A stretch of DNA of 64,000 bases. It comes from Anthoceros angustus. Its lineage: Eukaryota; Plantae; Anthocerotophyta. The position numbers and the translations under genes are program-made. Positions 29,036-53,815 of this stretch are shown piece after piece; the first letter of the stretch is position 1; each line of letters starts with the position of its first letter. The stretch covers positions 62,001 to 126,000 of the forward strand of contig MU008219.1 of the NCBI GenBank assembly GCA_010909165.1. The letters are read 5' to 3'. The notes beneath the pieces were generated by a model. It had not been told where the DNA came from, did not search any database, and was given only the letters and a program-made list of their open reading frames with translations.

Positions 29036-29043
29036 TAGGGTTT
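29036..29043 (-). promoter_or_regulatory. Telo-box (AAACCCTA) upstream of RPL18a copy 2; also in intron 3 of both copies (23921-23928, 29609-29616)
   Basis: TAGGGTTT on the + strand ~130 bp before the ATG; telo-boxes are a known feature of plant ribosomal-protein genes. Confidence 0.55.
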
Positions 29044-29169
29044 TAAGGGTTTTGGGAGGGAAGCCCTTATTGGTAAAGCAGGGAAGCAAGGGCACAACAA
29101 CCCTTTTGTTTTGGCGAAGGTGGGCTGTTCTTCAGGTCAGCTGGCCTAGCGTCGACAAGGCTCTGCGAC

Positions 29170-30047: not shown

Positions 30048-30291
30048 AGCCTGCTTTGGGATGGAGTCTGCTCTGGCTCCCTCCCTGTTTTGAGGTAGAT
30101 AGGTAATGAAGCGGAATTACTCCGGACGGCTTTGTCTACACTGCGATTCTCATGGGCAATTGTTTGACTTCTGTTTGGGGGTCATTAGTTGCTATAGTTT
30201 TGTCACTGTAATGTGCCTACCTATTCTTTGCAATTTCTGGCTCCTACACCCTCCCCAACTTCGGATGATTTAGGATCGCGGGGACGCGCGT

Positions 30292-32564: not shown

Positions 32565-32690
32565 CAAACTACAGTCTTCGATACTAAACTATATACCAAA
32601 CTACAGTCTCCAATACTAAACTATATATCAAATTATAGTCTTCAATACTAAACTATATACCAAACTACAGTCTTCAATACTAAACTATAT
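32565..32690. repeat. 32-bp minisatellite, ~4 copies (~7 copies at 44626-44845)
   Basis: Unit accaaactacagtcttcaatactaaactatat, immediately 3' of the TPR-SET stop codon. Confidence 0.9.
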
Positions 32691-32697
32691 TACATTG

Positions 32698-35010
32698 TCA
32701 AAGTAAATATCGTATAAGGCTAACTTTACATATCTCAGCCCATTCCATGACTAAGTCAAAATGTTTCTCCTCCACCGGTAAATAAATTTCCTTCGACTTT
32801 GCCTCAAGGAGTTCCCCAAAGTGATTGCTGCCAGCCCTACCAACACCATCCAACTCCTCCTCATGGCTCATGGCCAATAGGGCTAATATGCATGGATTGC
32901 CCGGATCAACGGAAGTTAAGATTTGCAGCGTCTCGTCCACGGTGGACAAGTCACCCCCACAGATCTTATTGCAACACAGGAGCACATAAGCCTGGGAAAA
33001 GGAGCACCGGATCCAGTCTTTCTCCTGCTTACTCAACTGTACACAGAGATTCCTCTCCAAGATCCTCTCCAAGTCATCAACAATTCTTTCCGCTCTCGAA
33101 GCCGTCTTCATCATGGTATCGCATGTTTCAAACTCTTCATCATATTCCTCGACCAAAGTAAACAAATCCGGGATGTTGTCCAGTGCCTGCTCTTCAAACT
33201 TACAACGAGAGCACTCACACATGAACAATGGCCAGGCTTGTCTTTCACGGAATAGCAGGCTGTTAGATATCGTGAAGTAATTGATGAAAAGCTCCTCTCC
33301 AGCTCCAACCGCACGACTCGAGGAAACAAAAAGATAATCGCCCACTGGGTAGTCCATGCAATTGGGGGTGCATGAATGGTTGAAGAAAGACGCCGTCCCG
33401 TATAATACACCCGCTATTAAGTTGGCTTCTTGAACAGCACGGAAGTTACCAATCCGGATGCTTTCCAAGTGTTCTTCCTCCCTTTCCGGATCTATGATAA
33501 CATCTTCATTGTCCTCGTCATCCCAGTCTTCAGTGAACAGGGACAGTGGAGGCACATCTTGTTGGGCCTGAGATCCGTGCTGAAGGCTCTTGACCTGCCT
33601 GGCATACTGTGGAGACTTTCGTGCCTTTTCTATCATCTGTACTGTGGCATCCTGCCACTCTGGAGACCAAGTGTCCACCGGCTCATTGGGTTCCTCATCT
33701 CTAGGGGAGCCATAGAAGACAAGGCCAGGACCATGGAAAGTCTTGCCTTGACCTGCTCTGGATCCTTCTGGCCGTGCAAGAGCCTTGCTCACAAGCAATA
33801 GCTCTCCTGGCCTCACGTCTCTTGTTGTAAACATTCCTCGCCCACAATTTGTTCTGCGGATCTCGACGGGTCCAATGTACTGACTGCACTCTGGTGCCTC
33901 TTTGGTTTCATTGAAGACGTCCACGAAGTCGTCAAACTTGTAGATTCCCAACCGACTCAGAGAAGCCATACCGACCTTCGTGAGCGAGATGTTATTCAAG
34001 ATGTCCTCATCCGAGGTCCTCGCCTGCAGCACATCAAGACAGGAAATTGCTTCTTCGTATCGGTGCATCCCGCACAAACCTCTAACTCTCTGCAGTGAGG
34101 CTTTGGCTTCGTTAGGGCTCAGCGCCAACAACTTATCGGCACTCTTCAGAGCCTTCTTGTAGCTTCCGTACCGCAGACATGACTCAGCATTACTACCATA
34201 GACGGTGATAAGCTTGTGTTTCATCGAATCAGGTGCATGATAGGTCCCCAGGATCTTCTCCAGGACTTGTGCACTCACGGTGTAGAAAGTAGCTGCCCGG
34301 CTCCACTCACCCTGAGCAAATCGAATGTTGCCTTGAACACATAGTTGCTATGCGCAATCCACCATGGGCACATGCCATCTGGATGTATTCTCTGCTGACT
34401 TGTAAATCTCAGCTGCATTCTCAAGTAAGTTCCTCTCGTGAATCGGCACTATGTCTGCAGGGTTACCAACCCTCCACCCAACCGTCCCATCATTCCACAG
34501 CTCTTCGAGCTTAGGCTCTTTGATTGCCACTTCCATACCCTCCGGTACTTGTCCCACACATCCACCTCGCCAGCTTTGGACACATAGAATTATCAATAAC
34601 CACTAAGACAAGATTCCCACAATGGTCTTCAAATATCGTCGGACTCCTCCGCCATGAACGGCGCCACGCAAAATTTGCCGACTACATACCCTCCTCCGCC
34701 AGTGGGTTGCTCACATTGCCGCCTCTCGGCGCAGGATACTCCTTTGTCGCTGCAAACTTGAGAGTGGAGCCGACGGCTCCGAAGGATCCCGCACAAGGTG
34801 GCTACACTGAGTATCCAAAAACGTAGAATCCTGAACCAGTTGCTTGAATTCCTGTGCAGCCTGATAGTGCCCGAAAATCAATCCTGGTTTATCGAACCTT
34901 TTTGACTGCTCTGCGAGGAAGATGTTCCTCTCGCTGAGCTTTTTCGCCGAAAGTTATCGACATCGCCGGAATCATCAGCTCTCCGGATTATGAGATGTCT
35001 TTGATGCCAT
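32698..35010 (-). pseudogene. Intronless TPR + split SET-domain (SMYD-like, no MYND) gene; 3' 526 codons open, 5' part disrupted
   Basis: GRGMFTTRDVRPGELLL, SFFNHSCTPNC, GEELFINYF, FMCECSRC and TPR helices. In-frame TAG at 34348-34350 and frameshifts between there and the ATG at 35010. Confidence 0.8.
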
Positions 35011-35104
35011 GACTCACCGTTTGTTGTTCGCTTCGTAGTATCGGAATGGAATGGTTTGGACGTGTCTGAACACTGTACAAATAGCCTTTTATTCGACTTG
35101 GTTC

Positions 35105-35675
35105 CTAGCTTGTAGATGCTTTGATCATACCCAAGCACAAAAGAGTGCATATATAGACACCGATTTCAAAACAATATCTGGGTAAATTAAGTTTTCAAAA
35201 CTCATAACCCGCTAACCTGTGCCTTTTGTTACTGACTTCAGTTCCTAGCTTGTAGATGCTTTGATCATACCCAAGCACAAAAGAGTGCATATATAGACAC
35301 CTAGATGCTTTGATCATACCCAAGCACAAAAGGGTGCATATATAGACACCGATTTCAAAACTATATCTGGATAAATTAAGTCTTCAAAACTCATAATCCG
35401 GTAACCTGAGCCTTTTGTTACTAGCTTGTAGATGCTTTGATCATACCCAAGCACAAAAGGGTGCATATATAGACACCGATTTCAAAATAATATCTGGATA
35501 AATTAAGTTTTCAAAACTCATAACCCGCTAACCTGTGCCTTTTTGTTACCGAGTTCAGTTCCTAGCTTGTAGATGCTTTGATCATACCCAAGCACAAAAG
35601 GGTGCATATATAGACATCGATTTCAAAACAATATCTGGATACATTAAGTTTTCAAAACTCATAACCCGGTAACCT
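35105..35675. repeat. ~120-140 bp tandem array, 5 units (one short), upstream of the TPR-SET gene; copy at ~47165-47731
   Basis: tagatgctttgatcatacccaagcacaaaag[ag]gtgcatatatagacac repeated five times. Confidence 0.92.
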
Positions 35676-35699
35676 GTGGAAGGACTTTACAACCCTGAA

Positions 35700-36820
35700 A
35701 CCCAAGGTTGGATTCATCGAAACTTTGGCATCCTGCCTTGGCTACTATCTGGACAAAGATCGTTTGAAATTATGCATCCCACTTCCTCTCCCGCCGGGAT
35801 GTCCACGTTCTGTGGTGCCGGCCCATGTAGGTATGTGCATGCTTATCCTCCAAATCCGGGTGCTGGGGCTCTTCTCATTTCAGACTCTTCAGGTGTTTCC
35901 GGTGAAAAATTAGAGGGCGAGCGGACCATGACATGGCTCTTCTGGCAATCTTGACTCGGTTTCCTTGCTCGCACGAATCTAAATAGCTCTCACAAAGGGA
36001 GCACACTCGCTGCAATGGCAGCCCACCACGCAGCCTTCGGACTTGATCTGGTAAATGCCCGAACCGCAACTTCTTCCAGATCGTGAAGCGATGCCTCTGT
36101 ACCAGGCCTTTGCTGCTATGTCGTAAGAAAACATATATTATAAATATATATTTAAAAATAGTGTTATCAGAACGCGGCGGACATTTCTTCGCGGAGGTTC
36201 CGAGAGTCGAAAGGAAGCGTTCATGATCCAAGTTGTGGCAGTGTCGAGGCGATGCATGAGTGTGCATCCTTTATAAGGCCCCTTCATGTTTGCCAACCTC
36301 AGGCTTTTCCAGTGTGTTCCACTTAGGAGGTGAGGCACCATGACCATCTTTCACACAAGCCAGTTGAACTACTCGGACTGCTGCATCAGAATATTTGTGT
36401 GCACTGGCGATCACACTTCTCCTGACTTGCCCGTCCCAAACAACAAACAAATATCTCCTGTTGCCTGTAAGGGAAGAGGAAAACAAATTTCTACCAGCGA
36501 CCAGTAACTTGTATATCAGTGAAGTCGACACAATCAGCATAGATTTAGCTGGTTGTAACGAACGCTGAGAAAGCTGTGGCCATCTCCACCGAAATTTCGA
36601 ACGTGCTCCTCTTCAATGTCCCACCACGCCATGTCATCGGGCGCCCCAGCAATCAGTGCCACAATTTAAGAGTGCTTCCTCTGCTGCAGCGTTTCACCCG
36701 ATTCCAAAACCTTGACCCCGGTGGAAACCTAAAAATTCCACACGATGTCCAAATTCGTCGAGCTGTGTTTGAAAAAATGCCTCCCGCGCTGAGCCTGTCA
36801 GCCAGAACGTAGTCGGGTGC
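35700..36820 (-). pseudogene. Degenerate TPR-SET paralog, closest to the 51410-53815 gene; copy at ~47750-48870
   Basis: VLADRLSAGGIF, GSGIYQIKSEGC, WSARPLIFHRKHLKSL match VLADRLSARGIS, GSGIYQFKHEGC, WPARALIFHGRNLKCL. Confidence 0.8.
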
Positions 36821-37151
36821 GGGTTCCTGGGAAGAACAGGCGTTGTGGTCATCAACCAGGGCCAGGAAGGTGCTCGATTAACCGTTCGGGCAGCGAAGTA
36901 GCGGACAAAAGCGAATTCAAGTTTTTGATTTCAAATTTCCGCGAACACCCTCAGCATACCTAGTGGACACACCAAAACACCTTTGGAACGCTGGCACTTT
37001 TAAACGACAATGAGCAGCAAGGTTACATCTAGATGCAACAGTTGCTTCTATGCAAGCTCGGGAAGCAGGCGAGATCACAAAACCACGCGTTTCTGGAGGT
37101 GCTGCCGGCGCGCCATCCCACCTGAAACAGGGCTACTGTAGAAGCTGACAA

Positions 37152-37448
37152 TTAACGGCAGCTGGAATTGTCCAGCGACTCCTCGCCATCGCCGCACTGC
37201 TCCAATTGATGGGCCGCGCCGGAGGCCAGCGCCGCAGCAGCAACTGCCGCCGTGATTCCTGCAATCCTTGCTCCTACAAGAGGGGCTGCGCATGTCGCCA
37301 CCCAGCTCGCTGTGTACCGGATGGCAGCCCGGCGGGCCTGACCGAAGTTGCCTGCACTTGCGTGCACTGCAGCCGCCACGAATCCCACAATTGGGATACT
37401 CTCACATAAGAGGGTGGCTTGACCGTTTTTCGCGAAGGCGTTTCCCAT
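37152..37448 (-). CDS. 98-aa Ala/Gly-rich hydrophobic protein with MGN start, unknown function
   Basis: Clean ATG-TAA ORF; collinear paralog of 37774-38067. Confidence 0.65.
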   Translation of the reverse strand: MGNAFAKNGQATLLCESIPIVGFVAAAVHASAGNFGQARRAAIRYTASWVATCAAPLVGARIAGITAAVAAAALASGAAHQLEQCGDGEESLDNSSCR

Positions 37449-37773
37449 TGGAGACGCAGCGAGGGAGACGATGCAGACAATGCTTGTGGGGCGATCGATA
37501 AATCGGGCGGGAATTGCTCACTAGAGTTTTGAACACGATTGTGAAACCTCAAGCCGGGATCACGCTCAACATATGTACTCACCAACTGGACACACCAAAA
37601 CGCCTAAGGTTGGCACTTTCTATGAGAATGAGCGAGGATTACATCTGATAGCAAGAGTTCTCCTCGACGCAAGCTGGGGAAGCCGTCTCCAGGCGTGTCA
37701 CGAACCGTACGCGTTTCTGGAGGTTCCGCTGGCGCCATCCCTCCTGCAACACGGCTGCAGAAGCTGATAAAGA

Positions 37774-38067
37774 TCAAGGGCGGCTGCCATTTTCCGACCC
37801 CTCGTCAACGCTGCACTGCTCCAAATGCGCCGCTGCGGCGCTTAGGGCAGCAGCGGCAGCCACTGCCGCCGCGACCTCTGCCATCCTGGCCGCTGCAAAA
37901 AGCGCTGCGCACATGCCCATGGAACTAACTGCGCATTTTACAACTGCCCGATGCGCTTGGCAAAAGTTCCCTGCCTCCGCATGGGCAGCGGCAACAAGGA
38001 AGCCCACGATGGGGATGTATTCGCATATCAACGTTGCTTCGCCGTCTTTTCCGAAGGGGTTTCCCAT
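37774..38067 (-). CDS. 97-aa Ala/Gly-rich hydrophobic protein with MGN start, unknown function
   Basis: MGNPFGKDGEATLICEYIPIVGFLVAAAHAEAGN; reading frame, length and stop position conserved with the paralog despite nucleotide divergence. Confidence 0.65.
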   Translation of the reverse strand: MGNPFGKDGEATLICEYIPIVGFLVAAAHAEAGNFCQAHRAVVKCAVSSMGMCAALFAAARMAEVAAAVAAAAALSAAAAHLEQCSVDEGSENGSRP

Positions 38068-38228
38068 CGCTAATGGAGAACGAGGGACACAACGAACACC
38101 AGGCTGCGCTTGTAGATTGTTGGAGGAATGGGCTCATTGCGTTGTGCCTCGGCAGTCCTCGCCTAAAGCGGCCATGCACTTACGCTCCACCCACTCTGCT
38201 AGAGTAGGACACACACTGCATGTCGGCT

Positions 38229-38360
38229 TAAGCGTAAGCCAGCGGAGTAAAAGCGAAACGTAAGCCCGCGGAGTAAAACCCGAGCGTAAGCCAGCGCAGT
38301 AAAGGAAGCGTAAGCACGCGGAGTAGAAACGTAAGCCCGTGGAGTAAAAGCGGACAGAAA
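38229..38360. repeat. ~22-bp degenerate tandem repeat (agcgtaagccagcggagtaaa); copy at ~50332-50460
   Basis: About five units directly visible upstream of the small-protein pair. Confidence 0.85.
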
Positions 38361-39844
38361 GCGCTCACTGAACAACTACAGGTAGATATTAAGTATAACA
38401 AAGCAGAAATGGTTAAAGAAAATATCATAGTATAGATTCTTCAAATATCTATTATACAGGTATCATAATTATTATTATATTATTCATGATATATAATCTT
38501 TATTCATATAAACTTGTAAAATGTATTTATTTTATTATAATATATCATTATAGATGTGTAGTTCCTTATGATGCATAGGAAATTCATGTTCACATCATGA
38601 AGCCACTGAAAGAAAGATTTTTATTTATTTATTTATATCTTAAATAATTTCATTGGTCATAAGCTAGAGTTTGTATGTGACTATGTATATGCCGGAGCTC
38701 ACCTACACCATGCTCCAAAACTTGGCATTCTCATCCTCCACAAGACCAAGGAATCCGGCGTGGCATCAATACAAAACACGCTTCCTTCCTGATTGCCTTC
38801 TTATCCACAGCGTACAAATGTTTCCGCCGTCAAGTTGAATTCATAATAGAGGATGACCGTTTAGTGAACAAAAACCTCTACTTACACGACAGTCTATTTA
38901 TACGGCAGTCTCAAAGTAATGCTATGCTTCACGTTTTGGCGGGTAGCTGAACATTCCCATGTATTCTTTGAGAACGAAGCTGCACATAGTACAGTACGAA
39001 TGAATGAATGAAAAGGATACTTACTCAAGTGGTTTGGAAATAACCTCCAATTGGTTAGGTCATGAATTCAAATCCTCTAGAGCCTTCAAAGGCTAACCTT
39101 GCCAATTTTATTGGCGCATGGGCACGGCCATTTAAGGGCGCTAGCATGCCCCTCCATTGAGGCTGACTTGAGGTGTGCTGGATATATTCCACAACGGATC
39201 CATGGGTATGAGGTTTTGCCAGATTCTGACGAAGGTTTTGGCCAGATGCTGACCAAGAATTGACATTCGAGGCCCACCGCAGAGGACTTGCGCAATTCTG
39301 GGCAAAGGAGGTGTGTATCAACGAGAAGGACTCTTTGAAAGCTCAGGTGGTTTCTTCGAATGCTCGTCGGTCAAGACCAAAAGCGGGAGGATGTAATCTA
39401 AGACTCAAGGGCTATGGGCGAGAACGATAGCTTCGATGAACGGGAACTGGAGCGGATTCGAAATTTGGTCATTGTGATGGATTCGGAGTCCGCTCTAGCA
39501 CCCGATGAGTCACAAGTTAGCCATAGAGAGTAGGTTTACGGTTTTGTAGGCACTTAGATATGCTTCTTCTCTATGTTCGTAATAACTTTTGGACCCGTTG
39601 CAGTGAGACAATTGATGATTTCATTTTCCTCTTCCTCGAACAAAGCATGGCCGGCCGCCCGCGCCCGCTGATGTCTTTATGTGTTGGAAACGGGTTTTCA
39701 TGATAACTACTCGTTGGAAAGCGGTCGACCTTTCTTGAAAACACGGCAAAACGCATATTTCGGGACTGTGTGGAATGTGCTAAGAGGGTTTCCATGTCAC
39801 AGAAGGGGGTTCGCATATTCACCCCCTCCGAAAGATATCGTGTT

Positions 39845-41282
39845 TATTCCGCAAACAACCAGTTGAACGCCGCCTCCTCCGCATCTTGATTCTGGAGCAT
39901 ACTAGAAAACCAGCTAGGATGACCAATAATTTAACTCTAGAAATGAGCCATAAGATAGGTGAAGAATTTTCCGTTCACACAAGTTAAGCACAAGCTAACG
40001 ATTGCACCAACATCTTAATCACTAGGATCGATGTCAAGATCTTCAAGCTCAAGATGTAACAGGAATTCCATAGTGCTAGCTATTAGCGACCTGATCGGCT
40101 TCCTTCGAACAGAGATGAAGTATGCGACGATAAATTTTGTTGGAGCCACTCGCATGCACAACAAGGTAGCCGCCCCAAAGGCATAGAGGCTCGCTAAGAT
40201 ATCATTCTGTGTGTCATGACCTTCATCTTCCGGGTCTCAATGGAAACATGACTTTCTTTCATAACGATTCATCTTCCCATCCCTAATGTCACCTCTACTT
40301 TTTGTAAATGCTTATGGAATTGTAAGATGCATTGGGGACATCAGACAATCTGAATGCTCCGAGCTCGCTCACTAAGCGTAGGAGCGGAGAAAGTTGAGAG
40401 AGGATCTTGTTATTGTGGCCACGGGGCTTGTAGCCTCCGCTCCGTCGTTGTCAATGGTTAGTCCAACTAGTTTACTCGTTAATCAGCCTAACTCCTAGCT
40501 CAATGAAATGCTTGCTTAATTAGGGCTGTATTCATTAGGGCGCCATATGCTAGCGAATTCTCATTGGCTTGTTCCAGTGCTTATCCAGGTCAACCGCCTG
40601 GCATTATACGCACTGGTCTTGGTCACTGATGGATGTAAAGCCCCATATTTGATGCATACTGACACAAATGCTTGAGATTTATGTGACCAATCCTAGAGAA
40701 TAAGGCAAATGCCACAGCTCGTTGCGCCTGGGAGGACGAGAATGGACCTCAATGGAATTCTGAATTATTAGACGTGGTGGCTCAAATTTAGTGACAGTGA
40801 TGTCATCACACATAGAATCGAACAGTCCAATTTGAAAACCGCTGAGAAAGATACCGCATGGTCATCGCAATCAATTTTGTTCTTAGGTAAGTAGACTTCA
40901 ATCTCTCAACCAAGATAGGACGCAGGGAAAGACTTGACCCTTAATTGTAAGCATTTAATTTTGCCTCTTATAATAAGGGATTTACTTCCACATCGAAGAT
41001 GGGTGGTGACGAAGGACAGAACTTTTATGGTCAACAATATAGTTGGGTGCAACCACTACTAGGAAAACGGGCCTTTTATAATGGAAATTACAACGGGCAT
41101 TACAACACCTTTACTAAGTCTGTAATAAAAACCCCCGTAGTAAACACACCTTAGTAATATCCATAGTAAAATTACATATGGTATATACGAGGGCTATATC
41201 ATGAATTAAATACGGTATTGTCCATTTCATACGGTGTATGGCTTGACTGGTGCTCCGTACACTGCTTAAACTTTACAACGGG
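39845..41282. repeat. ~1.44-kb duplicated block B (second copy 55647-57092), ending in a CACTA terminus
   Basis: Collinear high identity from caaacaaccagttgaacgcc to tttacaacgg. Confidence 0.93.
41054..41282 (+). mobile_element. CACTA (En/Spm) transposon terminus with ttacaac subterminal motifs
   Basis: CACTACTAGGAAAA followed by repeated ttacaac; matching opposite end not found. Confidence 0.7.
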
Positions 41283-43551: not shown

Positions 43552-43575
43552 ATAGATAGATAGATAGATAGATAA
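43552..43575. repeat. (GATA)n microsatellite
   Basis: atagatagatagatagatagata. Confidence 0.85.
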
Positions 43576-44851
43576 ATATATTTGTACTTGCTGCAATTGG
43601 ACAAGCAATGACTACCTTACGAGTATAAGATAAGCACATCGCTAGCACAAGTTGCTTGTGGCATACAAAGTGGTGTACATATATGTGTGTCTGGGTAGCT
43701 ATTGGATTTGGAGTGCTTGAATTCATGAGTGTCTCAATAGTGTTGGGTTTAAATACTTTCTTTCATACCATAATGCACTCCAAGGGGGTTTGCACGGGCA
43801 TAAAGAGTTTGGCTGAGATAAGAGGTATCGGATAAATGAGACTGCCTCTCGAGATTGGGTGATAAGCATTGGAGAGGTATCAGTAATGAGACTGCCTCTC
43901 GATATTGGGTGATAAGCATTGACTGCAGCACTGACCCCATTTCTTCTGTCACACCCCTTGCAGACAGTTTGATTCCCCGCTGGCCAGCAGAGTCTCCATG
44001 CTGACATGAGCTAACATGAATGGAGTCCCTTGCATACATTGTGGGACACAGTTTCTTCCCTGCCAAGATAATCCTCTCTATTGTCTTGCAGTGAAAGCTA
44101 CCGACAACGCAAAGCTCTTTACAGCTACTGATGTGAAAGTGACAGACTTGTAAAATTGCATCTGCAGATCCACAGGCGTTGTTTCAAGAGGTTTTTCTTT
44201 GTCGTTAGATCAACTGCTACAAAGAGGTCCCATTGCCGTCAGAAGCTTATAAGTAGCCATAGCTTACGCTCAGCCTACTCTGCTACTTTAAAACGTACAA
44301 AGCGGTTTACGCTCCGATCCGCCTACCTCCGGCTTTGTAAACTCACGCGCTGCATCCATAACCTGGATTGATGTTGGAAACGGATCGAAGGAAACGGATA
44401 GAGGAGTATCGACGCACGGCGTTGCCGCGTGAACCCTCATGTTTACCGCGCGTTCTCAATGTTGTCTCTCCGTGAGGGAGGGACCGGGATAGGAGGAAAG
44501 GACAAAAGTGATTAGATAGAATGCACCATATTTGTGCCCTTGACCTTGGGCCGCTTAGCTGCAAGTAACCCGCTTCAAGCTAGCCCAAATTGTCAGCAAA
44601 CCACGGCAAACTGCTAACTTAGCAACCAAACTACACTTCAATACTAAACTATATACCAAACTACGCCTTCAATACTAAACTATATACCAAACTACATCTT
44701 CAATACTAAACTATATACCAAACTACAGTCTTCAATACTAAACTATATACCAAACTACAGTCTTCAATACTAAACTATATACCAAACTACAGTCTTCAAT
44801 ACTAAACTATATACCAAACTACAGTCTTCAATATTAAACTATATTACATTG

Positions 44852-47063
44852 TCAAAGTAAATGTCGTATAAGGCTAACTTTACATATCTCAGCCCATTCC
44901 ATGACTAAGTCAAAATGTTTCTCCTCCACCGGTAAATAAATTTCCTTCGACTTTGCCTCAAGGAGTTCCCCAAAGTGATTGCCGCGAGCCCTACCAACAC
45001 CATCCAACTCCTCCTCATGGCTCATGGCCAATAGGGCTAATATGCATGGATTTCCCGGATCAACGTAAGTTAAGATTTGCGTCATCACGGTGGACAAGTC
45101 ACCCCCGCGATCTTATTGCAACACAGAGCACATAAGCACAGGAAAAGGAGCACCGGATCCAGCCTTTTCTCCCGCTTACTCAACTGCATACGTAGATTCC
45201 TCTCCAAGATCCTCTCCAAGTCATCAACAATTCTTTCCGCTGGCCTTCATCATGGTATCGCATGTTTCAAACTCTTCATCATATTCCTCGACCAAAGTAA
45301 ACAAATCCGGGATGCTGTCCAGTGCCTGCTCTTCAAACTTACAACGAGGGCACTCACACATGAACAATGGCCAGGCTTGTCTTTCACGGAATAGCAGGCT
45401 GTTAGATATCGTGAAGTAATTGATGAAAAGCTCCTCTCCAGCTCCAACCGCACGACTCGAGGAAACAAAAAGATAATCGCCCATTGGGTAGTCCATGCAA
45501 TTGGGGGTGCATGAATGGTTGAAGAAAGACGCCGTCCCGTATAATACACCCGCTATTAAGTTGGCTTCTTGAACAGCACGGAAGTTACCAATCCGGATGC
45601 TTTCCAAGTGTTCTTCCTCCCTTCCGGATCATCTTCATTGTCGTCGTCATCCCGCCTCTTGATGACAAGTGAGGCACATCTTGTTGGGCCCGAGATCCGT
45701 CAAGGCTCTTGACCGCATCGTGGAGACTTTCGTGCCTTTTCTATCATACATCTGTGGCATCCCGCCACTCAAGACCAAGTGTCCATCGCTCATTGGGTTC
45801 CTCATCTCTAGGGGAGCTAGAAGACAAGGCCGGACCATGGAAAGTCTTGCCTTGACGCTCGATCCTTCCGCCGTGCAAGAGCCTTGCTCACAAGCAATAG
45901 CCTCTCGGCCTCACGCCTCTTGTTGTAAACATTCCTCGCCCACAATTTGTTTTGCGGATCTCGACGGGTCCAATGTCGCGTCACTGCCTCTTTGGTTTCA
46001 TTGAAGACGCCCACGAAGTCACAAACTTGTAGATTCCCAACCGACTCAGAGAAGCCGTTTACGACCTTCAGAGCCGAGATGTTATTCAAGATGTCCTCAT
46101 CCGAGGTCCTCGCCGCAGACAGATGTGCTTCTTCGTGTGTGCATCCGACAAACCTCTAACTCTCTGGGTGAGGCTTTGGCTTCGTTAGGGCTCTGCCACA
46201 ACAACTTCGGCACTCTTCGTAGCCTTCTTGAAGCTTCCATCGCAGACATGACTCAAAGATTACTACCATAGGCGGCGATAAGCTTGTGTTTCATCGAATC
46301 AGTGCATGATAGGTCCCGTGATCTTCTCCAGACTTGTGCACTCACGGTGTAGAAAGTAGCGCTCCACTCACTCGAGCAAATCGAATGTTGCCTTGAACAC
46401 ATAGTTGCTCTGCGCAATCCACCATGGGCACATGCCATCGGATGTATTCTCTGACTTGTAAATCTCAGCATTCTCAAGTAAGTTCCTCGTGAATCGGCAC
46501 TATGTCCGCAGGTTACCAACCCTCCACCAACCGTCCCATCATTCCACAGCTCTTCGAGCTTAGGCTCTTTGATTGCCACTTCCATACCCTCCGGGTACTT
46601 GTCCCACACATCCACCTCGCTTGCGTTGGACACATAGAATTATCAATAACCACTAAGACAGATTCCCACAATGGTCTTCAAATATCATGGACTCCTCCGG
46701 TCATGAACGCGTCACGCAAAATTTGCCGACTACATACCCTCCTCTGCTTGTGGGTTGCTCACATTGCCGTCTCCTGGCAGCAGGGATACTCCTTTGTCGC
46801 TGCAAACTTGAGAGTGGAGCCGACGGCTCCGAAGGATCCCGCAGAAGATGGCTACACTGAGTATCCAAAAACATAGAATCCTGAACCAGTTGCTTGAATT
46901 CCTGTGCAGCCTGATAGTGCCCGAAAATCAATCCTGGTTTATTGAACCTTTTTGACTGCTCTGCGAGGAAGATGTTCCTCTCGCTGAGCTTTTTCGCCAA
47001 AAAGTTATCGATACTGTCGGGAATCATCAGCTCTCCTGGATTATGAGATGTCTTTGATGCCAT
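44852..47063 (-). pseudogene. TPR-SET gene copy with many frameshifts
   Basis: Fragments MASKTSHNPGELMIPDSIDNFLAKKLSERN.., DVWDKYPEGMEVAIKEP, SFFNHSCTPNC, EWAEICKVSLIRHLL. Confidence 0.85.
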
Positions 47064-49267
47064 GACTCCGCACCGTTTGTTGTTTGCTTCGTAGTATCGG
47101 AATGGAATGGTTTGGACGTGTACAGTAACACTGGTGTACAAATAGCCTTTTGTTACTGACTTCAGTTCCTAGCTTGTAGATGCTTTGATCATACCCAAGC
47201 ACAAAAGAGTGCATATATAGACACCGATTTCAAAACAATATCTGGATAAATTAAGTTTTCAAAACTCATAACCCTAACTTTGTGCCTTTTATTCTGACTT
47301 TTAGCTTGTAGATGCTTTGATCATACCCAAGCACAAAAGAGTGCATATATAGACACCTAGATGCTTTGATCATACCCAAGCACAAAAGGGTGCATATATA
47401 GACACCGATTTCAAAACTATATCTTGATAAATTAAGTCTTCAAAACTCATAATCCGGTAACCTGAGCCTTTTGTTACTAGCTTGTAGATGCTTTGATCAT
47501 ACCCAAGCACAAAAGGGTGCATATATAGACACCGATTTCAAAATAATATCTGGATAAATTAAGTTTTCAAAACTCATAACCCGCTAACCTGTGCCTTTTT
47601 GTTACCGAGTTCAGTTCATAGCTTGTAGATGCTTTGATCATACCCAAGCACAAAAGGGTGCATATATAGACATCGATTTCAAAACAATATCTGGATACAT
47701 TAAGTTTTCAAAACTCATAACCCGGTAACCTGTGGAAGGACTTTACAACCCGAAACCCAAGGTTGGATTCATCGAAACTTTGGCATCCTGCCTTGGCTAC
47801 TATCTGGACAAAGATCGTTTGAAATTATGCATCCCACTTCCTCTCCCGCCGGGATGTCCACGTTCTGTGGTGCCGGCCCATGTAGGTATGTGCATGCTTA
47901 TCCTCCAAATCCGGGTGCTGGGGCTCTTCTCATTTCAGACTCTTCAGGTGTTTCCGGTGAAAAATTAGAGGGCGAGCGGACCATGACATGGCTCTTCTGG
48001 CAATCTTGACTCGGTTTCCTTGCTCGCACGAATCTAAATAGCTCTCACAAAAGGAGCACACTGCGCTGCAATGGCAGCCCACCACGCAGCCTTCGGACTT
48101 GATCTGGTAAATGCCCGAACCGCAACTTCTTCCAGATCGTGAAGCGATGCCTCTGTACCAGGCCTTTGCTGCTATGTCGTAAGAAAACATATATTATAAA
48201 TATATATTTAAAAATAGTGTTATCAGAACGCGGCGGACATTTCTTCGCGGAGGTTCCGAGAGTCGAAAGGAAGCGTTCATGATCCAAGTTGTGGCAGTGT
48301 CGAGGCGATGCATGAGTGTGCATCCTTTATAAGGCCCCTTCATGTTTGCCAACCTCAGGCTTTTCCAGTGTGTTCCACTTAGAGGTGAGGCACCATGACC
48401 ATCTTTCACACAAGCCAGTTGAACTACTCGGACTGCTGCATCAGAATATTTGTGTGCACTGGCGATCACACTTCTCCTGACTTGCCCGTCCCAAACAACA
48501 AACAAATATCTCCTGTTGCCTGTAAGGGAAGAGGAAAACAAATTTCTACCAGCGACCAGTAACTTGTATATCAGTGAAGTCGACACAATCAGCATAGATT
48601 TAGCTGGTTGTAACGAACGCTGAGAAAGCTGTGGCCATCTCCACCGAAATTTCGAACGTGCTCCTCTTCAATGTCCCACCACGCCATGTCATCGGGCGCC
48701 CCAGCAATCAGTGCCACAATTTAAGAGTGCTTCCTCTGCTGCAGCGTTTCACCCGATTCCAAAACCTTGACCCCGGTGGAAACCTAAAATTCCACACGAT
48801 GTCCAAATTCGTCGAGCTGTGTTTGAAAAAAATGCCTCCCGCGCTGAGCCTGTCAGCCAGAACGTAGTCGGGTGCGGGTTCCTGGGAAGAACATGGTCCT
48901 AGTGCTGCTCTCCAGAGCTCAGATGGATGATTCGAGAGTTCCAAAGATGCGTTTGGCGTTGTGGTCATCAACCAGGGCCAGGAAGGTGCTCGATTAACCG
49001 TTCGGGCAGCGAAGTAGCGGACAAAAGCGAATTCAAGTTTTTGATTTCAAATTTCCGCGAACACCCTCAGCATACCTAGTGGACACACCAAAACACCTTT
49101 GGAACGCTGGCACTTTTAAACGACAATGAGCAGCAAGGTTACATCTAGATGCAACAGTTGCTTCTATGCAAGCTCGGGAAGCAGGCGAGATCACAAAACC
49201 ACGCGTTTCTGGAGGTGCTGCCGGCGCGCCATCCCACCTGAAACAGGGCTACTGTAGAAGCTGACAA

Positions 49268-50170
49268 TTAACGGCAGCTGGAATTGTCCAGCGACTCCTC
49301 GCCATCGCCGCACTGCTCCAATTGATGGGCCGCGCCGGAGGCCAGCGCCGCAGCAGCAACTGCCGCCGTGATTCCTGCAATCCTTGCTCCTACAAGAGGG
49401 CTGCGCATGTCGCCACCCAGCCTCGCTGTGTACCGGATGGCAGCCCGGCGGGCCTGACTGAAGTTGCCTGCACTTGCGTGCACTGCAGCCGCCACGAATC
49501 CCACAATTGGGATACTCTCACATAAGAGGGTGGCTTGACCGTTTTTCGCGAAGGCGTTTCCATTGGAGACGCAGCGAGGGAGACGATGCAGACAATGCTT
49601 GTGGGGCGATCGATAAATCGGGCGGAATTGCTCACTAGAGTTTTTGAACACGATTGTGAAACCTCAAGCCGGGATCACGCTCAACATATGTACTCACCAA
49701 CTGGACACACCAAAACGCCTAAGGTTGGCACTTTCTGAGAATGAGCGAGGATTACATCTGATAGCAAGAGTTCTCCTCGACGCAAGCTGGGAAGCCGTCT
49801 CCAGGCGTGTCACGAACCGTACGCGTTTCTGGAGGTTCCGCTGGCGCCATCCCTCCTGCAACACGGCTGCAGAAGCTGATAAAGATCAAGGGCGGCTGCC
49901 ATTTTCCGACCCCTCGTCAACGCTGCACTGCTCCAAATGCGCCGCTGCGCGCAGCGCAGCGGCAGCCACTGCCGCCGCGACCTCTGCCATCCTGGCCGCT
50001 GCAAAAGCGCTGCGCACATGCCCATGGAACTAACTGCGCATTTTACAACTGCCCGATGCGCTTGGCAAAGTTCCCTGCCTCCGCATGGGCAGCGGCAACA
50101 AGGAAGCCCACGATGGGGATGTATTCGCATATCAACGTTGCTTCGCCGTCTTTTCCGAAGGGGTTTCCAT
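49268..50170 (-). pseudogene. Frameshifted copies of the two small MGN proteins
   Basis: Single-base losses right after the ATG (tttccat vs tttcccat) in both genes. Confidence 0.7.
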
Positions 50171-51409
50171 CGCTAATGGAGAACGAGGGACACAACGAAC
50201 ACCAGGCTGCGCTTGTAGATTGTTGGAGGAATGGGCTCATTGCGTTGTGCCTCGGCAGTCCTCGCCTAAAGCGGCCATGCACTTACGCTCCACCCACTCT
50301 GCTAGAGTAGGACACACACTGCATGTCGGCTTAAGCGTAAGCCAGCGGAGTAAAAGCGAAACGTAAGCCCGCGGAGTAAAACCCGAGCGTAAGCCAGCGC
50401 AGTAAAAGGAAGCGTAAGCACGCGGAGTAGAAACGTAAGCCCGTGGAGTAAAAGCGGACAGAAAGCGCTCACTGAACAACTACAGGTAGATATTAAGTAT
50501 AACAAAGCAGAAATGGTTAAAGAAAATATCATAGTATAGATTCTTCAAATATCTATTATACAGGTATCATAATTATTATTATATTATTCATGATATATAA
50601 TCTTTATTCATATAAACTTGTAAAATGTATTTATTTTATTATAATATATCATTATAGATGTGTAGTTCCTTATGATGCATAGGAAATTCATGTTCACATC
50701 ATGAAGCCATTGAAAGAAAGATTTTTATTTATTTATTTATATCTTAAATAATTTCATTGGTCATAAGCTAGAGTTTGTATGTGACTATATATATGCCGGA
50801 GCTCACCTACACCATACTCCAAAACTTGGCATTCTCATCCTCCACAAGACCAAGGAATCCGGTGTGGCATCAATACAAAACACGCTTCCTTCCGATCACT
50901 CCCCATAGCAAGCTAAGAGATGATGACACGTTGGAGGTATCTCGTGTGGCGCCAAGATCATTGTACTGAATGAGAGGGGTTACGCATAAGAGATTTTTGT
51001 GTGTGGTTTTTCCTCCATTTGAGAAGAAAGAGGTCTAGGAAACTTTTGAAGCATTCCAAGAGTGGATCATTTTTGCTAGCTTCTTGTGAAGTTAGGAACA
51101 TAGCGTTTCATTCCATTCCAAGAGTTGATCATTTTTGCTAGCTTTTTGTTAAGCTTCTATGAGAGTAGTCCTAACATCATTCACTTCACAATGGTATGCA
51201 TTCAACCCAAGATATTTTAAGACCAATATATTATTGCTAAATATATAATAGATACTGGTAGTAATAGATACTACTAGATACTAGTAATATATAATAATAT
51301 ACAATTATAATACAATGATCGCTGATACATATGCTTATTATAAAAATAGTTAACATGGGCTACCGTTGCTGGGAACATGGTCCCAATCACGATACAATGT
51401 CCACGGTGT

Positions 51410-53815
51410 TCACCATTTAATGAAATCTCGACAGAAGAAAGGGATATGACCAGTACCCACGTCCACCATAGTGTGAAAACTTTTCTCCTTCAAGGGCATG
51501 TAGAGGTTCCGACAAGAGGCTCGGAGAAGCTGCCCCACATGTCGTCGAGCATGTCTGTCAAGCGCATAGCGCTGATTAATTCCCAGGGCCAAGAGTGCGA
51601 GTATGCTTGGACTACCCGGATGGACTGAGTTCAAGATTCGCACAGTCTTGTCCATGAACTGCTCTCCAAAGCAGTTAAAGGAGAGAACATAAACTTGGGC
51701 AAAGGAACATCGGATCCAGTCCTTCTGTTCCTCAGTGAACCCCGCACAAGCTTGGCTGCGCAGGATTGCCTCCAGCACGCCTGCAACTTGGCAAGCCCTA
51801 GCAGTAGTGGAAGAAGTTCTTCTGCCAGATTCGAAGTCTGCATGGTATGTCTGGGCCAGAGCTGCCAAAGCCGGGATGCGCTGGAGTGCCTCCTCCTCGA
51901 ATTTGCACCGAGCACAGTCGCACTGGAAAGGGCTCTTGGAACAGTGGCTCTTGCGGGACGCCAGGCTCTCGAAAACGGTGAAGTAATTGATGTAGAGCTC
52001 CGCTCCAGCCCGGACAGGCCGGGTGCAGCTGATGAACATCATCTTCCTCTGGAATGTCCTGTAAGTGCAGTTGGGAATGCACGAGTGGTTGAAGAAGGAA
52101 GGCAGCCCGTAGATCGCACCCGCAAACGCGTTGGCTTCAACGATGCGACGGATGTCGCGGACGTCGACCTGGGATAGGTATTCTTCGTTCACAGCCCCGT
52201 ACTTCTCGTCATCCCAGTCTTCGGTGAAGAGGGAGAATGGAGGCACATCCAGCCTGCCCTGGCTCCCGTGCTGCAGACTCCTGAGCTGCGCTGCGTACTG
52301 TGGAGATGCCTGTGCCTTGGCTATCATCTGGACAACCATGGCTTGGAGTTGTGCATTCCACTTCCCCCCGGGGACCTCCACGTTCCGTGCTTCCGGCCCA
52401 TGTGCATGCCTATCTTCCTCCGATGTCAGACACTTCAGGTTTCTCCCATGAAAGATTAGGGCTCGAGCGGGCCATGTCCCGGGCTCTTCCCCTTCAGCAA
52501 GAGGCTTGCTCACAAGCAGAAGCTCCCCTGGCTTCAAATCCCTAGTAGCAAACATGGCTCGCCTGCCGCTCTGCCTGCTGGCACGAATCTCGATAGGTCC
52601 TACAAAGGGAGCACACTCTGGTGCATCCTCGCTTCCATGGCAGTCCTCCATGCATCCTTCGTGCTTGAACTGGTAGATGCCCGATCCGCTCTGTCGAGCA
52701 CCAATCTCCGCCCTGCACTTGTCTCTCACGATGCGAACCAGAACCTCCGGGTCGGAGCTGGCACTACTCTCCTGCAGGGACTCGAGCAAGACAACCGCCT
52801 CCTCGTATTTATGCATCCTGTGCAAGCATCCCGCCTTCCGCAGCGAGGTCTCGACGTCGCTAGGGTTCAGCTCCAACGCCATCTCCGCACTCCGGAGGGC
52901 TTGCTTGTAGCGTCCCAGGCCGATCAACGCGTCACACATCTTGGAGTAGACCATGGCAAGCTTCTCATCACAGATCGACCCTGCATTGCTGCTCGCCGCC
53001 TCCTCCATGTTTATCTCCTCATTCCACGGCCAGGCACGCACATGTTTGCACAAATCCAGAAGCCTGGCACTCTTGTCGAAGCACGCAGCCGCGCGGTTCC
53101 AGCTCTTGCGAGCCAAGTGCACGTTTCCTCGAGCGCAGAGCTCCTCCACGCATTTCATGAACACATCACAGCGGCATTCGTTCAAATCCACGGCAAACCG
53201 ATCCAACAATTGCGCGCAATCCCGCTGTCCAGCCGGCAGCGGCACGATGTCTACCGGGTTGGAAATCTTCACCCCCAGCGTCCCGTCCTCCCAGAGCTGC
53301 GTGAACATGGGCTCCTTAATGGCCACCTTCATTCCCTGAGGGTACTTCTGGCAGACATCTTCCCTGCTGGCAGCCGGAACCACAGCATTGTCGATCACCA
53401 CCAGGACGGCACTTCCCTCCTCATCTTCAAACACCGTGCGAACTCCACCCGTCAGAAAGGGCTTCACACACAGCGTGCCAACAGCGTACAGCCCTGTGCT
53501 CAGCGCTGAACAGCCATCGTCCAGGCGCTGGAAGCCATCCAGATTCAGCTTCAGCTCCCGAAGACTTGCTTCATCCAAAAATGAGAAGGGGGCCGCTGGC
53601 CTCGGAGGATCCATAGTCACGTAGCCCAGCGGCCTGGCATCCTCCTGGAATGCATACTCGTCCACCAGTCTGCTGAACTCCTCCGCAGCCTCATTGTGGC
53701 GCATGACCAGGCCCGATTTATCCAAATTCCTTGCGCTTCGCCTGAAAGAGATGCCTCTGGCGCTGAGTCTGTCAGCCAAAACGTTGTCTATAACTGGAAT
53801 ATATCCAGATGCCAT
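51410..53815 (-). CDS. Intact intronless 801-aa protein: N-terminal beta-rich domain, TPR repeats, split SET domain and post-SET CxCxxC
   Basis: Long GC-rich ORF. YPQGMKVAIKEP..ISNPVDIV; TPR LGRYKQALRSAEMALELNP; MFATRDLKPGELLL, SFFNHSCIPNC, GAELYINYF, FQCDCARC. Confidence 0.9.
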   Translation of the reverse strand: MASGYIPVIDNVLADRLSARGISFRRSARNLDKSGLVMRHNEAAEEFSRLVDEYAFQEDARPLGYVTMDPPRPAAPFSFLDEASLRELKLNLDGFQRLDDGCSALSTGLYAVGTLCVKPFLTGGVRTVFEDEEGSAVLVVIDNAVVPAASREDVCQKYPQGMKVAIKEPMFTQLWEDGTLGVKISNPVDIVPLPAGQRDCAQLLDRFAVDLNECRCDVFMKCVEELCARGNVHLARKSWNRAAACFDKSARLLDLCKHVRAWPWNEEINMEEAASSNAGSICDEKLAMVYSKMCDALIGLGRYKQALRSAEMALELNPSDVETSLRKAGCLHRMHKYEEAVVLLESLQESSASSDPEVLVRIVRDKCRAEIGARQSGSGIYQFKHEGCMEDCHGSEDAPECAPFVGPIEIRASRQSGRRAMFATRDLKPGELLLVSKPLAEGEEPGTWPARALIFHGRNLKCLTSEEDRHAHGPEARNVEVPGGKWNAQLQAMVVQMIAKAQASPQYAAQLRSLQHGSQGRLDVPPFSLFTEDWDDEKYGAVNEEYLSQVDVRDIRRIVEANAFAGAIYGLPSFFNHSCIPNCTYRTFQRKMMFISCTRPVRAGAELYINYFTVFESLASRKSHCSKSPFQCDCARCKFEEEALQRIPALAALAQTYHADFESGRRTSSTTARACQVAGVLEAILRSQACAGFTEEQKDWIRCSFAQVYVLSFNCFGEQFMDKTVRILNSVHPGSPSILALLALGINQRYALDRHARRHVGQLLRASCRNLYMPLKEKSFHTMVDVGTGHIPFFCRDFIKW

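What the first reader, a model, noticed from the sequence alone, without database searches (positions are those of the whole stretch)
32698..53815. Amplified cluster of intronless, fungal-like TPR-SET genes interleaved with small membrane-targeted proteins
Seen: five TPR-SET copies or relics in 21 kb, all on the minus strand (32698-35010, ~35700-36820, 44852-47063, ~47750-48870, intact 51410-53815). All are intronless while neighbouring housekeeping genes are intron-rich, and a pair of small MGN proteins sits in the same orientation between them. The architecture (N-terminal ..EDEEG..VAIKEP..NPVDIV domain + TPR + split SET without MYND) is not a canonical plant histone methyltransferase class. 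From memory it resembles a widespread fungal TPR-SET family. Inference: a horizontally acquired, birth-and-death cassette, possibly a defence module pairing a TPR-targeted non-histone lysine methyltransferase with a membrane effector.
Basis: partly seen in the sequence, partly recalled or inferred. Interest (0 to 1): 0.8.

Follow-up and report, generated by a model that had tools for sequence, protein, structure and literature searches.

The report
Plant TPR-SET methyltransferase gene cluster, mostly decayed
This stretch of a (probably hornwort) plant genome holds one working gene and four decayed copies of a SMYD-like protein-methylating enzyme family that many land plants and fungi share, so it is an ordinary gene cluster gaining and losing copies, not a recent import from fungi or a demonstrated defence module.

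Summary
There is one intact 801-aa gene (51410-53815, minus strand) with an N-terminal beta-barrel, a TPR domain, a split SET domain without MYND and a helical C-terminal domain. There are also four broken copies.

The five copies are three old paralogues. A recent ~7-kb segmental duplication (31.8-38.8 kb against 43.9-50.9 kb) doubled the pseudogene, the relic and the two small MGN genes.

- The 23 of the 25 best database hits that carry a source name are all land plants: liverworts, mosses, a lycophyte, a fern and gymnosperms. Two are named MpATXR1 and MpATXR5. The other two are unnamed contigs.
- Being intronless is normal for this family in plants. It holds in Diphasiastrum, Ceratodon, the Brassica ATXR1 clade and a further single-exon 535-aa relative.
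- Fungal relatives exist but score far lower. The tree cannot place the window's long branch.
- The fold matches SMYD1-3 and Toxoplasma AKMT, so this is the known plant split-SET ATXR1-like class.
- The small MGN proteins look like real coding genes (dN/dS 0.2). They have no detectable relatives and are absent beside TPR-SET genes at the four distinct other loci examined. The only evidence pairing them with TPR-SET is that they lie next to each other here.

The scan already found another TPR-SET cluster elsewhere in this genome (s1-697442).

The parts
51410..53815 (-). Intact intronless TPR-SET gene of 801 aa. Layout: N-terminal helices 9-55; beta-barrel 109-193; TPR 216-378; SET 408-441 and 567-609 with a helical insert and no MYND; post-SET Cys cluster 632-637; helical C-terminal domain 648-789.
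   Evidence: ORF. Pfam SET and TPR. AF2 model pLDDT 79.7, pTM 0.74. Best fold matches are SMYD2, SMYD3, SMYD1 and AKMT at Z 14-15. N576, H577, C579, E606, Y611, C632, C634 and C637 are kept. Contigs of a related organism B cover it at about 92-94% nt identity, with a +2/+1 insertion pair that keeps the frame.
32698..35010 (-). Pseudogene psi1, an old full-length paralogue of the intact gene (37% aa identity). Its C-terminal 526 codons (32698-34278) are still open. The N-domain part is broken by frame changes and a TAG at 34348-34350.
   Evidence: tblastn. Frame translations. Stop-by-stop comparison with the duplicate. Pfam SET and TPR_19 on the 526-aa ORF.
44852..47078 (-). Recent duplicate of psi1, more decayed. 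It has many 1-bp deletions and ten deletions of 4 bp or more.
   Evidence: blastn 93.9% identity over 4.3 kb. Indel tally. Substitutions between the two copies fall 35:40:26 on codon positions, with 10 synonymous against 60 non-synonymous codon changes. That pattern is neutral.
35734..36822 (-). Relic of a third paralogue, closer to the intact gene than psi1 is. Only about aa 7-32 and 369-501 are recognisable, spread over three frames.
   Evidence: tblastn pieces at 39-65% identity. Three-frame reading. Stretches of 68-75% nt identity to 52313-52689.
47789..48878 (-). Duplicate of the relic, about 99% identical to 35734-36822.
37152..37448 (-). MGN1, a 98-aa ORF. It has an N-terminal MGNAFAK (a fit to the N-myristoylation pattern, from general knowledge) and two moderately hydrophobic Ala/Gly-rich segments.
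   Evidence: ORF. 55% aa identity to MGN2 with dN/dS 0.20. Kyte-Doolittle 19-residue maximum 1.85. No Pfam match. No homologue found. AF2 gives three helices but pLDDT is only 55.6.
37774..38067 (-). MGN2, a 97-aa paralogue of MGN1.
49271..50168 (-). Duplicate MGN pair in the second block. As assembled, both have lost the ATG frame and carry 1-bp indels, which may be partly assembly error.
   Evidence: ORFs. 28 differing alignment positions, 23 of them gaps and 16 of the 22 events indels. X1 contigs carry the first block's letters at several of these places.
31807..38789 (.). First block of the segmental duplication, carrying psi1, a 141-bp tandem repeat, the relic and the MGN pair.
   Evidence: Self-blastn. 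Divergence is about 6-10% up to about 35250 and about 1% beyond it.
43922..50893 (.). Second block of the segmental duplication. The intact gene lies just beyond it, in a 4.75-kb stretch (50894-55646) that is replaced by an unrelated 1.06 kb in the first block.

Best explanation
This is a lineage-specific tandem cluster of the plant ATXR1-like (split-SET, SMYD-like, MYND-less) TPR-SET family of protein lysine methyltransferases, in a bryophyte-type plant that other notes of this scan call a probable hornwort.

Inferred history: an old array held three diverged paralogues with two small MGN genes between them. Two of the paralogues decayed, giving psi1 and the relic. A recent ~7-9.5-kb segmental duplication then doubled the decayed part together with the MGN pair. 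The intact gene survives next to only one of the two blocks.

The intact protein most likely works as a SAM-dependent lysine methyltransferase of non-histone proteins. This is inferred from its SMYD-type fold and its retained NHSC, Tyr and post-SET Cys residues. Its partner or substrate would be chosen by the N-terminal beta-barrel and the TPR domain.

In most family members the TPR carries the carboxylate-clamp pattern of Hsp70/Hsp90 EEVD-binding co-chaperones ([R/K]xxGN ... SNR ... KxxxR). This copy has lost three of the five clamp residues, so it probably binds something else.

Shown: architecture, fold, copy structure, family distribution, gene structure in relatives. Inferred: enzymatic activity, substrate class, chaperone link.
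For: - Architecture and fold.
- Conserved catalytic residues.
- Copy structure.
- Plant distribution of the best hits, including the Marchantia records named MpATXR1 and MpATXR5.
- Single-exon relatives in Diphasiastrum, Ceratodon and locus L006. PMC13210918 reports no introns in the Brassica ATXR1 clade.
- PMC4521844 lists ATXR1 as the Arabidopsis Smyd-like protein without a zinc finger.
- Tandem pairs occur elsewhere: contig L001 with P0006 and P0007, and Diphasiastrum genes with consecutive locus tags O6H91_12G064600 and 064700.
- The clamp pattern across 40 family members and its loss in this copy. The TPR domain aligns to Sgt2, FKBP52, FKBP38, Sti1, PP5 and CHIP TPR domains at Z 11-13.
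- An orthologue in related organism B at about 92-94% nt identity, with a frame-keeping insertion pair.
Against: - No RNA evidence. No listed run is on record as RNA, and the one run guessed to be RNA gave nothing.
- The window's pair sits on a long branch (stem 0.6-0.9 changes per site). The AU test does not significantly favour a plant position over a fungal one (p 0.15 against 0.16).
- No sequence closer than 34% identity is in the 1.8-billion-representative library, so orthology to any named gene is not established.
- I never compared Arabidopsis ATXR1 itself. The link rests on the names of the Marchantia records and on literature.
- Gly420 of the GRG motif is Ala in this copy, so activity could be impaired.
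- Some of the frame damage in the pseudogenes may be assembly error.
Confidence: 0.75

Rival explanations
1. An ancient fungus-to-plant or plant-to-fungus transfer founded the plant TPR-SET family, and the window's divergent pair descends from it. This is the reader's horizontal-transfer idea moved back to early land plants or earlier.
For: - The family is very large in Ascomycota, Basidiomycota and Mucoromycota.
- The N-domain + TPR + SET architecture is shared between the fungal and plant clades.
- The genes are intronless in many plants.
- The AU test does not reject the window pair grouping with fungi (p 0.16).
Against: - Members also occur in a dinoflagellate (Symbiodinium), a stramenopile (Tribonema), diatoms and rotifers. 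That spread fits old eukaryotic ancestry as well.
- The mixture-model tree keeps the fungal clade apart with support 96.
- No rooted tree with a proper outgroup was made.
Confidence: 0.15
2. The cluster is a functional two-part module. The TPR-SET enzyme acts with, or on, the myristoylated MGN membrane microproteins, for example in defence.
For: - The MGN pair lies between TPR-SET copies on the same strand and was duplicated along with them.
- The MGN paralogues show purifying selection (dN/dS 0.20).
- Their part of the duplication is kept at about 99% identity while the neighbouring pseudogene part is at about 90-94%.
Against: - No MGN-like ORF lies within 10 kb of TPR-SET genes in Diphasiastrum, Marchantia or Ceratodon, or on contig L001.
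- No homologue of MGN was found anywhere. The only lead is an unverified ESM Atlas hit (0.93) to a 90-aa fungal hypothetical protein.
- The TPR-SET copies immediately flanking the intact MGN pair are dead.
- Neighbouring genes alone are weak evidence of a shared function.
Confidence: 0.06
3. psi1 is not dead. Its open 526-codon C-terminal ORF (TPR remnant + SET + C-terminal domain) is expressed as an N-domain-less enzyme like the roughly 540-aa ATXR1-type proteins, and the apparent N-terminal damage is partly assembly error.
For: - The 526-aa ORF has full Pfam SET and TPR_19 matches.
- Many family members lack the N-domain (architecture '-TsS').
- The assembly differs from X1 contigs mainly by indels (8 and 13 gaps against 0 and 2 substitutions).
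Against: - Substitutions between the two psi1 copies show no third-position excess (35:40:26), and 60 of 70 changed codons are non-synonymous.
- The ORF starts at GTG. Read by eye from the frame-0 translation, its first ATG lies after the first TPR helix pair.
- The duplicate has ten deletions of 4 bp or more.
Confidence: 0.1

Closest known systems
Plant ATXR1/SDG35-like split-SET proteins, including the Marchantia records named MpATXR1 and MpATXR5
   Same: - TPR followed by a split SET without a MYND finger, a post-SET Cys cluster and a helical C-terminal domain.
- Single-exon genes.
- Land-plant members are the best database hits (PMC4521844; PMC13210918).
   Different: - At most 34% identity to any of them.
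- The 801-aa protein has the N-terminal beta-barrel that the roughly 540-aa angiosperm-type members lack.
- Three of the five TPR clamp residues are replaced.
- Here the gene sits in a decaying multi-copy cluster.
Animal SMYD lysine methyltransferases: SMYD2, SMYD3 and SMYD1; also SMYD4 and Arabidopsis AtTPR9, which carry an N-terminal TPR
   Same: - SET, SET-I insert, post-SET and TPR-like C-terminal domain superpose over about 300 residues at Z 14-15, with Foldseek E about 4e-8.
- SMYD4 and AtTPR9 also carry an N-terminal TPR. AtTPR9's is of the carboxylate-clamp type (PMC4521844, PMC2939883).
   Different: - No MYND zinc finger in the SET insert.
- An extra N-terminal beta-barrel.
- Sequence similarity is limited to the SET C-part (E about 3e-7).
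Fungal TPR-SET family, for example Fusarium graminearum FGSG_00040 in secondary-metabolite cluster C02
   Same: - Same N-domain + TPR + SET layout in fungal representatives such as P0099 from Hysterangium.
- NCBI names a Cryptomeria homologue 'methyltransferase FGSG_00040'.
- The ESM Atlas neighbours are mostly Ascomycota clusters.
   Different: - Fungal members score 94 bits or less against 120-183 for plants.
- They lack detectable similarity in the C-terminal domain.
- They form a separate clade with support 96 in the mixture-model tree.
- FGSG_00040 is listed only as a conserved hypothetical protein (PMC4198257).
Toxoplasma gondii AKMT (apical complex lysine methyltransferase)
   Same: A MYND-less SMYD-like fold. 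Z 15.2, 299 residues aligned, rmsd 5.0.
   Different: No sequence-level kinship was shown. The N-terminal region differs, and AKMT's biology (parasite motility) is unrelated.

Membership tests
SET-domain lysine methyltransferase (Pfam PF00856) | SET domain match above the curated cut-off | tested here: met
   47.8 bits against a cut-off of 22.4 for the 801-aa protein. 50.3 bits for the psi1 ORF.
SET-domain lysine methyltransferase (Pfam PF00856) | Catalytic and cofactor motifs: NHSC, the ELxxxY tyrosine and the post-SET Cys cluster | tested here: met
   N576, H577, C579, E606, Y611, C632, C634 and C637 are present. Gly420 of the GRG motif is Ala.
SET-domain lysine methyltransferase (Pfam PF00856) | Methyl transfer from SAM to lysine | not testable with these tools
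   Needs an enzyme assay.
SMYD family | SET split by an insert, followed by post-SET and a TPR-like C-terminal domain | tested here: met
   AF2 model. SMYD2, SMYD3 and SMYD1 align over residues 402-790 at Z 14-15.
SMYD family | MYND zinc finger inside the split SET | tested here: not met
   Residues 441-566 hold one Cys and four His. The stretch 445-485 has pLDDT below 50. There is no zf-MYND Pfam hit. It is therefore SMYD-like, not a SMYD.
Plant ATXR1/SDG35-like (MYND-less split-SET) clade | TPR + split SET without a zinc finger | tested here: met
   PMC4521844 states that ATXR1 has no Zn finger.
Plant ATXR1/SDG35-like (MYND-less split-SET) clade | Groups with named plant ATXR1-type proteins in a tree | tested here: inconclusive
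   The best hits are plant members, including MpATXR1 and MpATXR5. The window pair falls in a polytomy, and the AU test gives p 0.15 for a plant position against 0.16 for a fungal one. Arabidopsis ATXR1 itself was not available for comparison.
Plant ATXR1/SDG35-like (MYND-less split-SET) clade | Single-exon gene | tested here: met
   One 2406-bp ORF. The same holds in L002, L005 and L006 and in the Brassica ATXR1 clade (PMC13210918).
Carboxylate-clamp TPR co-chaperones (Hsp70/Hsp90 EEVD binders) | Five clamp residues: K/R and N in helix A1, N in A2, K and R in A3 | tested here: not met
   Most family members keep [R/K]xxGN, SNR and KxxxR. The window protein has CxxGN, SKM and ExxxR, so 2 of 5 are kept.
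Horizontally transferred fungal gene | Nested within a fungal clade, to the exclusion of other plants | tested here: not met
   The window pair lies outside the fungal clade (support 96) in the mixture-model tree. Every named hit among the 25 best is a land plant. The AU test cannot exclude a sister position.

The most novel reading that the evidence does not exclude
The TPR-SET family may be a chaperone-tail-directed (Hsp70/Hsp90 EEVD-binding) protein methyltransferase family. In this hornwort-type lineage it would have entered rapid copy turnover, with clamp loss retargeting the surviving enzyme to new partners. The lineage-restricted, possibly myristoylated MGN microproteins, kept nearly identical in both duplicate blocks, would be one such partner or substrate.
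Probability: 0.07. Interest if true: 0.65.

Novelty: new member of a known kind. Interest (0 to 1): 0.3.

Why it matters
It removes a horizontal-transfer and defence-module claim. The TPR-SET family is an old, widely shared and largely unstudied eukaryotic methyltransferase family whose plant members are normally intronless.

Two modest points remain useful:
- Most of the family carries a chaperone-type clamp TPR in front of a SMYD-like catalytic core. That gives a testable idea about substrates.
- This genome holds at least two decaying clusters of the family, with very divergent copies. That marks it as a fast-evolving family in this lineage.

The MGN microproteins are orphan genes that appear to be under purifying selection and could be followed up on their own.

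Tried and rejected
- Word-indexed protein searches failed. The whole protein and a 40-sequence family alignment were both swamped by unrelated TPR proteins and returned no family members. The exhaustive HMMER search was used instead.
- The word-indexed search with MGN1 found nothing at E up to 1. Pfam gave only sub-threshold noise for the MGN ORFs.
- The AF2 model of MGN1 was too poor (pLDDT 55.6) to justify a fold search.
- The treekit careful tree and its AU test under the mixture model did not finish in the time allowed. An unconstrained LG+F+G4 search on the 50-row alignment also timed out. I fell back on the quick PMSF tree and on an LG+F+G4 AU test with 32 rows, using tree searches stopped at 90 s each. 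That test was indecisive.
- Run search: no run on record as RNA holds the stretch, and the one run guessed to be RNA (X5) laid nothing. Only contigs were available, so neither expression nor the reality of the 1-bp indels could be settled.
- The compositional test for foreign origin was uninformative. The intact gene has GC3 0.66, and its neighbours range from 0.26 to 0.76.
- Rfam and tRNA scans of the window were empty. The bacterial promoter and terminator scan is irrelevant to a eukaryote.

Full report
**What is in the sequence**

The region holds one long open reading frame, 51410-53815 on the minus strand, of 801 codons. Pfam finds a SET domain (residues 419-611, 47.8 bits, cut-off 22.4) and TPR repeats (289-357). 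A tblastn of this protein against the window maps all related pieces:
- a full-length paralogue at 32743-34947 (36.8% identity, E 6e-131);
- a fragmented copy at 44897-47012;
- two short relics at 35734-36077 and 47789-48145, plus an N-terminal scrap at 48801-48878.

A profile HMM built from 40 family members finds nothing else in any of the six frames of the window.

**Five copies are really three**

Self-comparison shows a recent segmental duplication:
- 31807-32690 matches 43922-44748 at 87%;
- 32563-36838 matches 44717-48893 at 93.9%;
- 36839-38789 matches 48955-50893 at 98.8%;
- a further piece, 39845-41281, matches 55647-57092 at 95.3%.

Each block carries the full-length paralogue (psi1), a 141-bp tandem repeat, the relic and two small ORFs. 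The intact gene lies in a 4.75-kb stretch (50894-55646). In the first block this stretch is replaced by an unrelated 1.06 kb. The history is therefore three old paralogues, followed by one block duplication and an insertion, deletion or replacement.

Divergence between the blocks is uneven. It is about 6-10% up to about 35250 and about 1% beyond it, and it changes at the tandem repeat. I have no tested explanation. Gene conversion or a two-step duplication are the obvious candidates.

**State of the copies**

psi1 (32698-35010) keeps one frame over most of its length. Its N-domain needs several frame changes, and it has a TAG at 34348-34350 where the duplicate reads GAG. Its last 526 codons are open and still match SET and TPR_19.

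The duplicate has many 1-bp deletions and ten deletions of 4 bp or more. Substitutions between the two copies fall 35:40:26 on codon positions. They change the amino acid in 60 of 70 altered codons. This means no purifying selection has acted since the duplication.

The relic is recognisable only over about residues 7-32 and 369-501, in three different frames.

One caution applies. Contigs of run X1, which may be the source sample, differ from the window by 8 and 13 gaps but only 0 and 2 substitutions over two unique stretches. Over the duplicated MGN part they carry the first block's letters. Some 1-bp indels may therefore be assembly errors.

**What the protein is**

An AlphaFold2 model built with the 40-sequence alignment is good (pLDDT 79.7, pTM 0.74). 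Its layout is:
- helices 9-55;
- a seven-strand beta-barrel, 109-193;
- a TPR domain, 216-378;
- SET strands 408-441 and 567-609, separated by a helical insert;
- a post-SET segment;
- a helical C-terminal domain, 648-789.

Foldseek and VIA-align both put SMYD2, SMYD3, SMYD1 and Toxoplasma AKMT first (E about 4e-8; Z 14-15 over about 300 residues spanning 402-790). By sequence, SMYD3 is the closest solved protein (E 3e-7).

The SET insert has no zinc finger. It holds one Cys and four His, and residues 445-485 are disordered. The protein is therefore SMYD-like but MYND-less. PMC4521844 describes exactly this state for Arabidopsis ATXR1.

The catalytic residues are present: N576, H577, C579, E606, Y611, C632, C634 and C637. 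Gly420 is Ala.

**The TPR domain**

The TPR domain superposes on the Hsp70/Hsp90-binding TPR modules of Sgt2, FKBP52, FKBP38, Sti1, PP5 and CHIP (Z 11-13). Across plant and fungal members alike, the alignment shows the carboxylate-clamp pattern [R/K]xxGN ... SNR ... KxxxR.

That these residues bind the EEVD tail is established knowledge for clamp TPRs. PMC2939883 used them to predict Arabidopsis co-chaperones, including the SET protein AtTPR9. Binding is not shown for this family.

The window's intact protein has Cys, Lys and Glu at three of the five positions. If the family is chaperone-directed, this copy has probably changed partner.

**Who has this family**

An exhaustive HMMER search of 1.84 billion representatives gave 3250 hits. 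None is above 34% identity, and only 20 have E at or below 1e-30.

Of the 25 best hits, the 23 that carry a source name are all land plants:
- Diphasiastrum, with two genes carrying consecutive locus tags;
- Marchantia, with records named MpATXR1 and MpATXR5;
- Calypogeia, Physcomitrium, Ceratodon and Sphagnum;
- Adiantum, Ginkgo and Cryptomeria. One Cryptomeria record is named 'methyltransferase FGSG_00040' after a Fusarium protein.

The other two, P0006 and P0007, are unnamed and lie in tandem on one 7.7-kb contig.

A separate clade contains the one labelled fungus, Hysterangium. Its members score at most 94 bits. Symbiodinium and Tribonema members also exist. ESM Atlas neighbours are mostly Ascomycota clusters, with Rotifera, diatoms, Streptophyta and Mucoromycota as well.

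No hornwort proteome seems to be in these libraries. This is my inference from the lack of any close hit and from other agents' reading of the genome as a probable hornwort.

**Phylogeny**

A FastTree of 123 rows and a quick IQ-TREE PMSF tree of 50 rows both join the intact gene and psi1 as a pair (support 100) on a long stem. In the PMSF tree the fungal clade is set apart (support 96). The window pair sits in a polytomy with the land-plant group and a few protist sequences.

An AU test on 32 rows (LG+F+G4, with tree searches stopped at 90 s each) rejects neither hypothesis. Forcing the pair with the fungal clade gives deltaL 6.9, p 0.16. Forcing it with the plant group gives deltaL 4.0, p 0.15.

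The tree alone therefore does not decide. The large score gap argues for a plant affinity. So does C-terminal-domain similarity, which is detectable almost only in the sequences that group with the plants.

**Introns**

In fact several relatives are single exons:
- the Diphasiastrum gene (2334 bp for 777 aa);
- the Ceratodon gene (2280 bp for 759 aa);
- a 535-aa TPR-SET gene on NCBI assembly GCA_009389715.1, which I believe from memory is a monocot.

PMC13210918 reports no introns in the Brassica ATXR1 subfamily. The Marchantia MpATXR5 gene does have introns.

Intron-rich neighbours are real. A topoisomerase Toprim domain is split over two ORFs at 17102-17644 and 17771-18469. GC3 of the intact gene (0.66) lies within the wide local range of 0.26-0.76.

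**The small MGN proteins**

The ORFs at 37152-37448 (98 aa) and 37774-38067 (97 aa) are 55% identical, with dN/dS 0.20 at saturated dS. This supports real coding genes.

They begin MGNAFAK and MGNPFGK. From general knowledge this fits the N-myristoylation pattern. They have two Ala/Gly-rich segments just above the usual hydropathy threshold.

They have no Pfam match and no homologue in the word-indexed search. The structure model is poor. The one unverified lead is an ESM Atlas score of 0.93 to a 90-aa fungal hypothetical cluster.

No MGN-like sequence lies next to TPR-SET genes on contig L001 or within 10 kb of the Diphasiastrum, Marchantia and Ceratodon genes. The proposed enzyme-effector pairing rests on adjacency in this one locus.

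**Conservation and expression**

Contigs of a related organism B cover 51299-53912 at about 92-94% identity. They carry a +2/+1 insertion pair ten bases apart that keeps the frame. This fits a maintained orthologue. A dN/dS could not be computed from the output given. No RNA data were available.

**Verdict**

This is a new, very divergent member cluster of a known but unstudied family. The scan has already described a second cluster of the same family on another piece of this genome (s1-697442), and its follow-up reached the same family assignment.

Noticed in passing
window 35250 (boundary), within 31807-38789 against 43922-50893: Divergence between the two duplicate blocks jumps from about 6-10% to about 1% at the 141-bp tandem repeat (35302-35676 and 47358-47732). 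Gene conversion or a two-step duplication could explain it, but neither was tested.
   Followed up: partly
window 6030-31110: The first half of the window is also full of dispersed and tandem segmental repeats at 82-93% identity, for example 7194-7857 against 23639-24324 and 29327-30010, and 23382-24551 against 29038-30239. They lie around a type IA topoisomerase gene whose Toprim and Topoisom_bac exons are at 17102-18469.
   Followed up: no
window 85-771: An ORF with a CD36-family Pfam match (E 2e-15) on an AT-rich block (GC 0.35, GC3 0.26). The scan has already noted it as s1-697527.
   Followed up: no
window 51008-54397: Contigs of run X1 differ from the assembly by 8 and 13 gaps but only 0 and 2 substitutions. 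This points to residual indel errors in either the assembly or that run, and matters for every pseudogene call in this genome.
   Followed up: partly
window 32563-32690 and 44625-44844: A 32-bp tandem repeat lies just downstream of psi1, with 4 units in the first block and 7 in the second.
   Followed up: no
window 59739-60227: A 162-aa minus-strand ORF with an F-box match (E 3.6e-5) and high GC3 (0.76).
   Followed up: no
L001 1703-7154: An unnamed public contig (SRR33208241) carries two intronless TPR-SET genes in tandem, P0006 (732 aa) and P0007 (777 aa). These are the two best hits to the window protein, so tandem pairs of this family recur outside this genome.
   Followed up: partly
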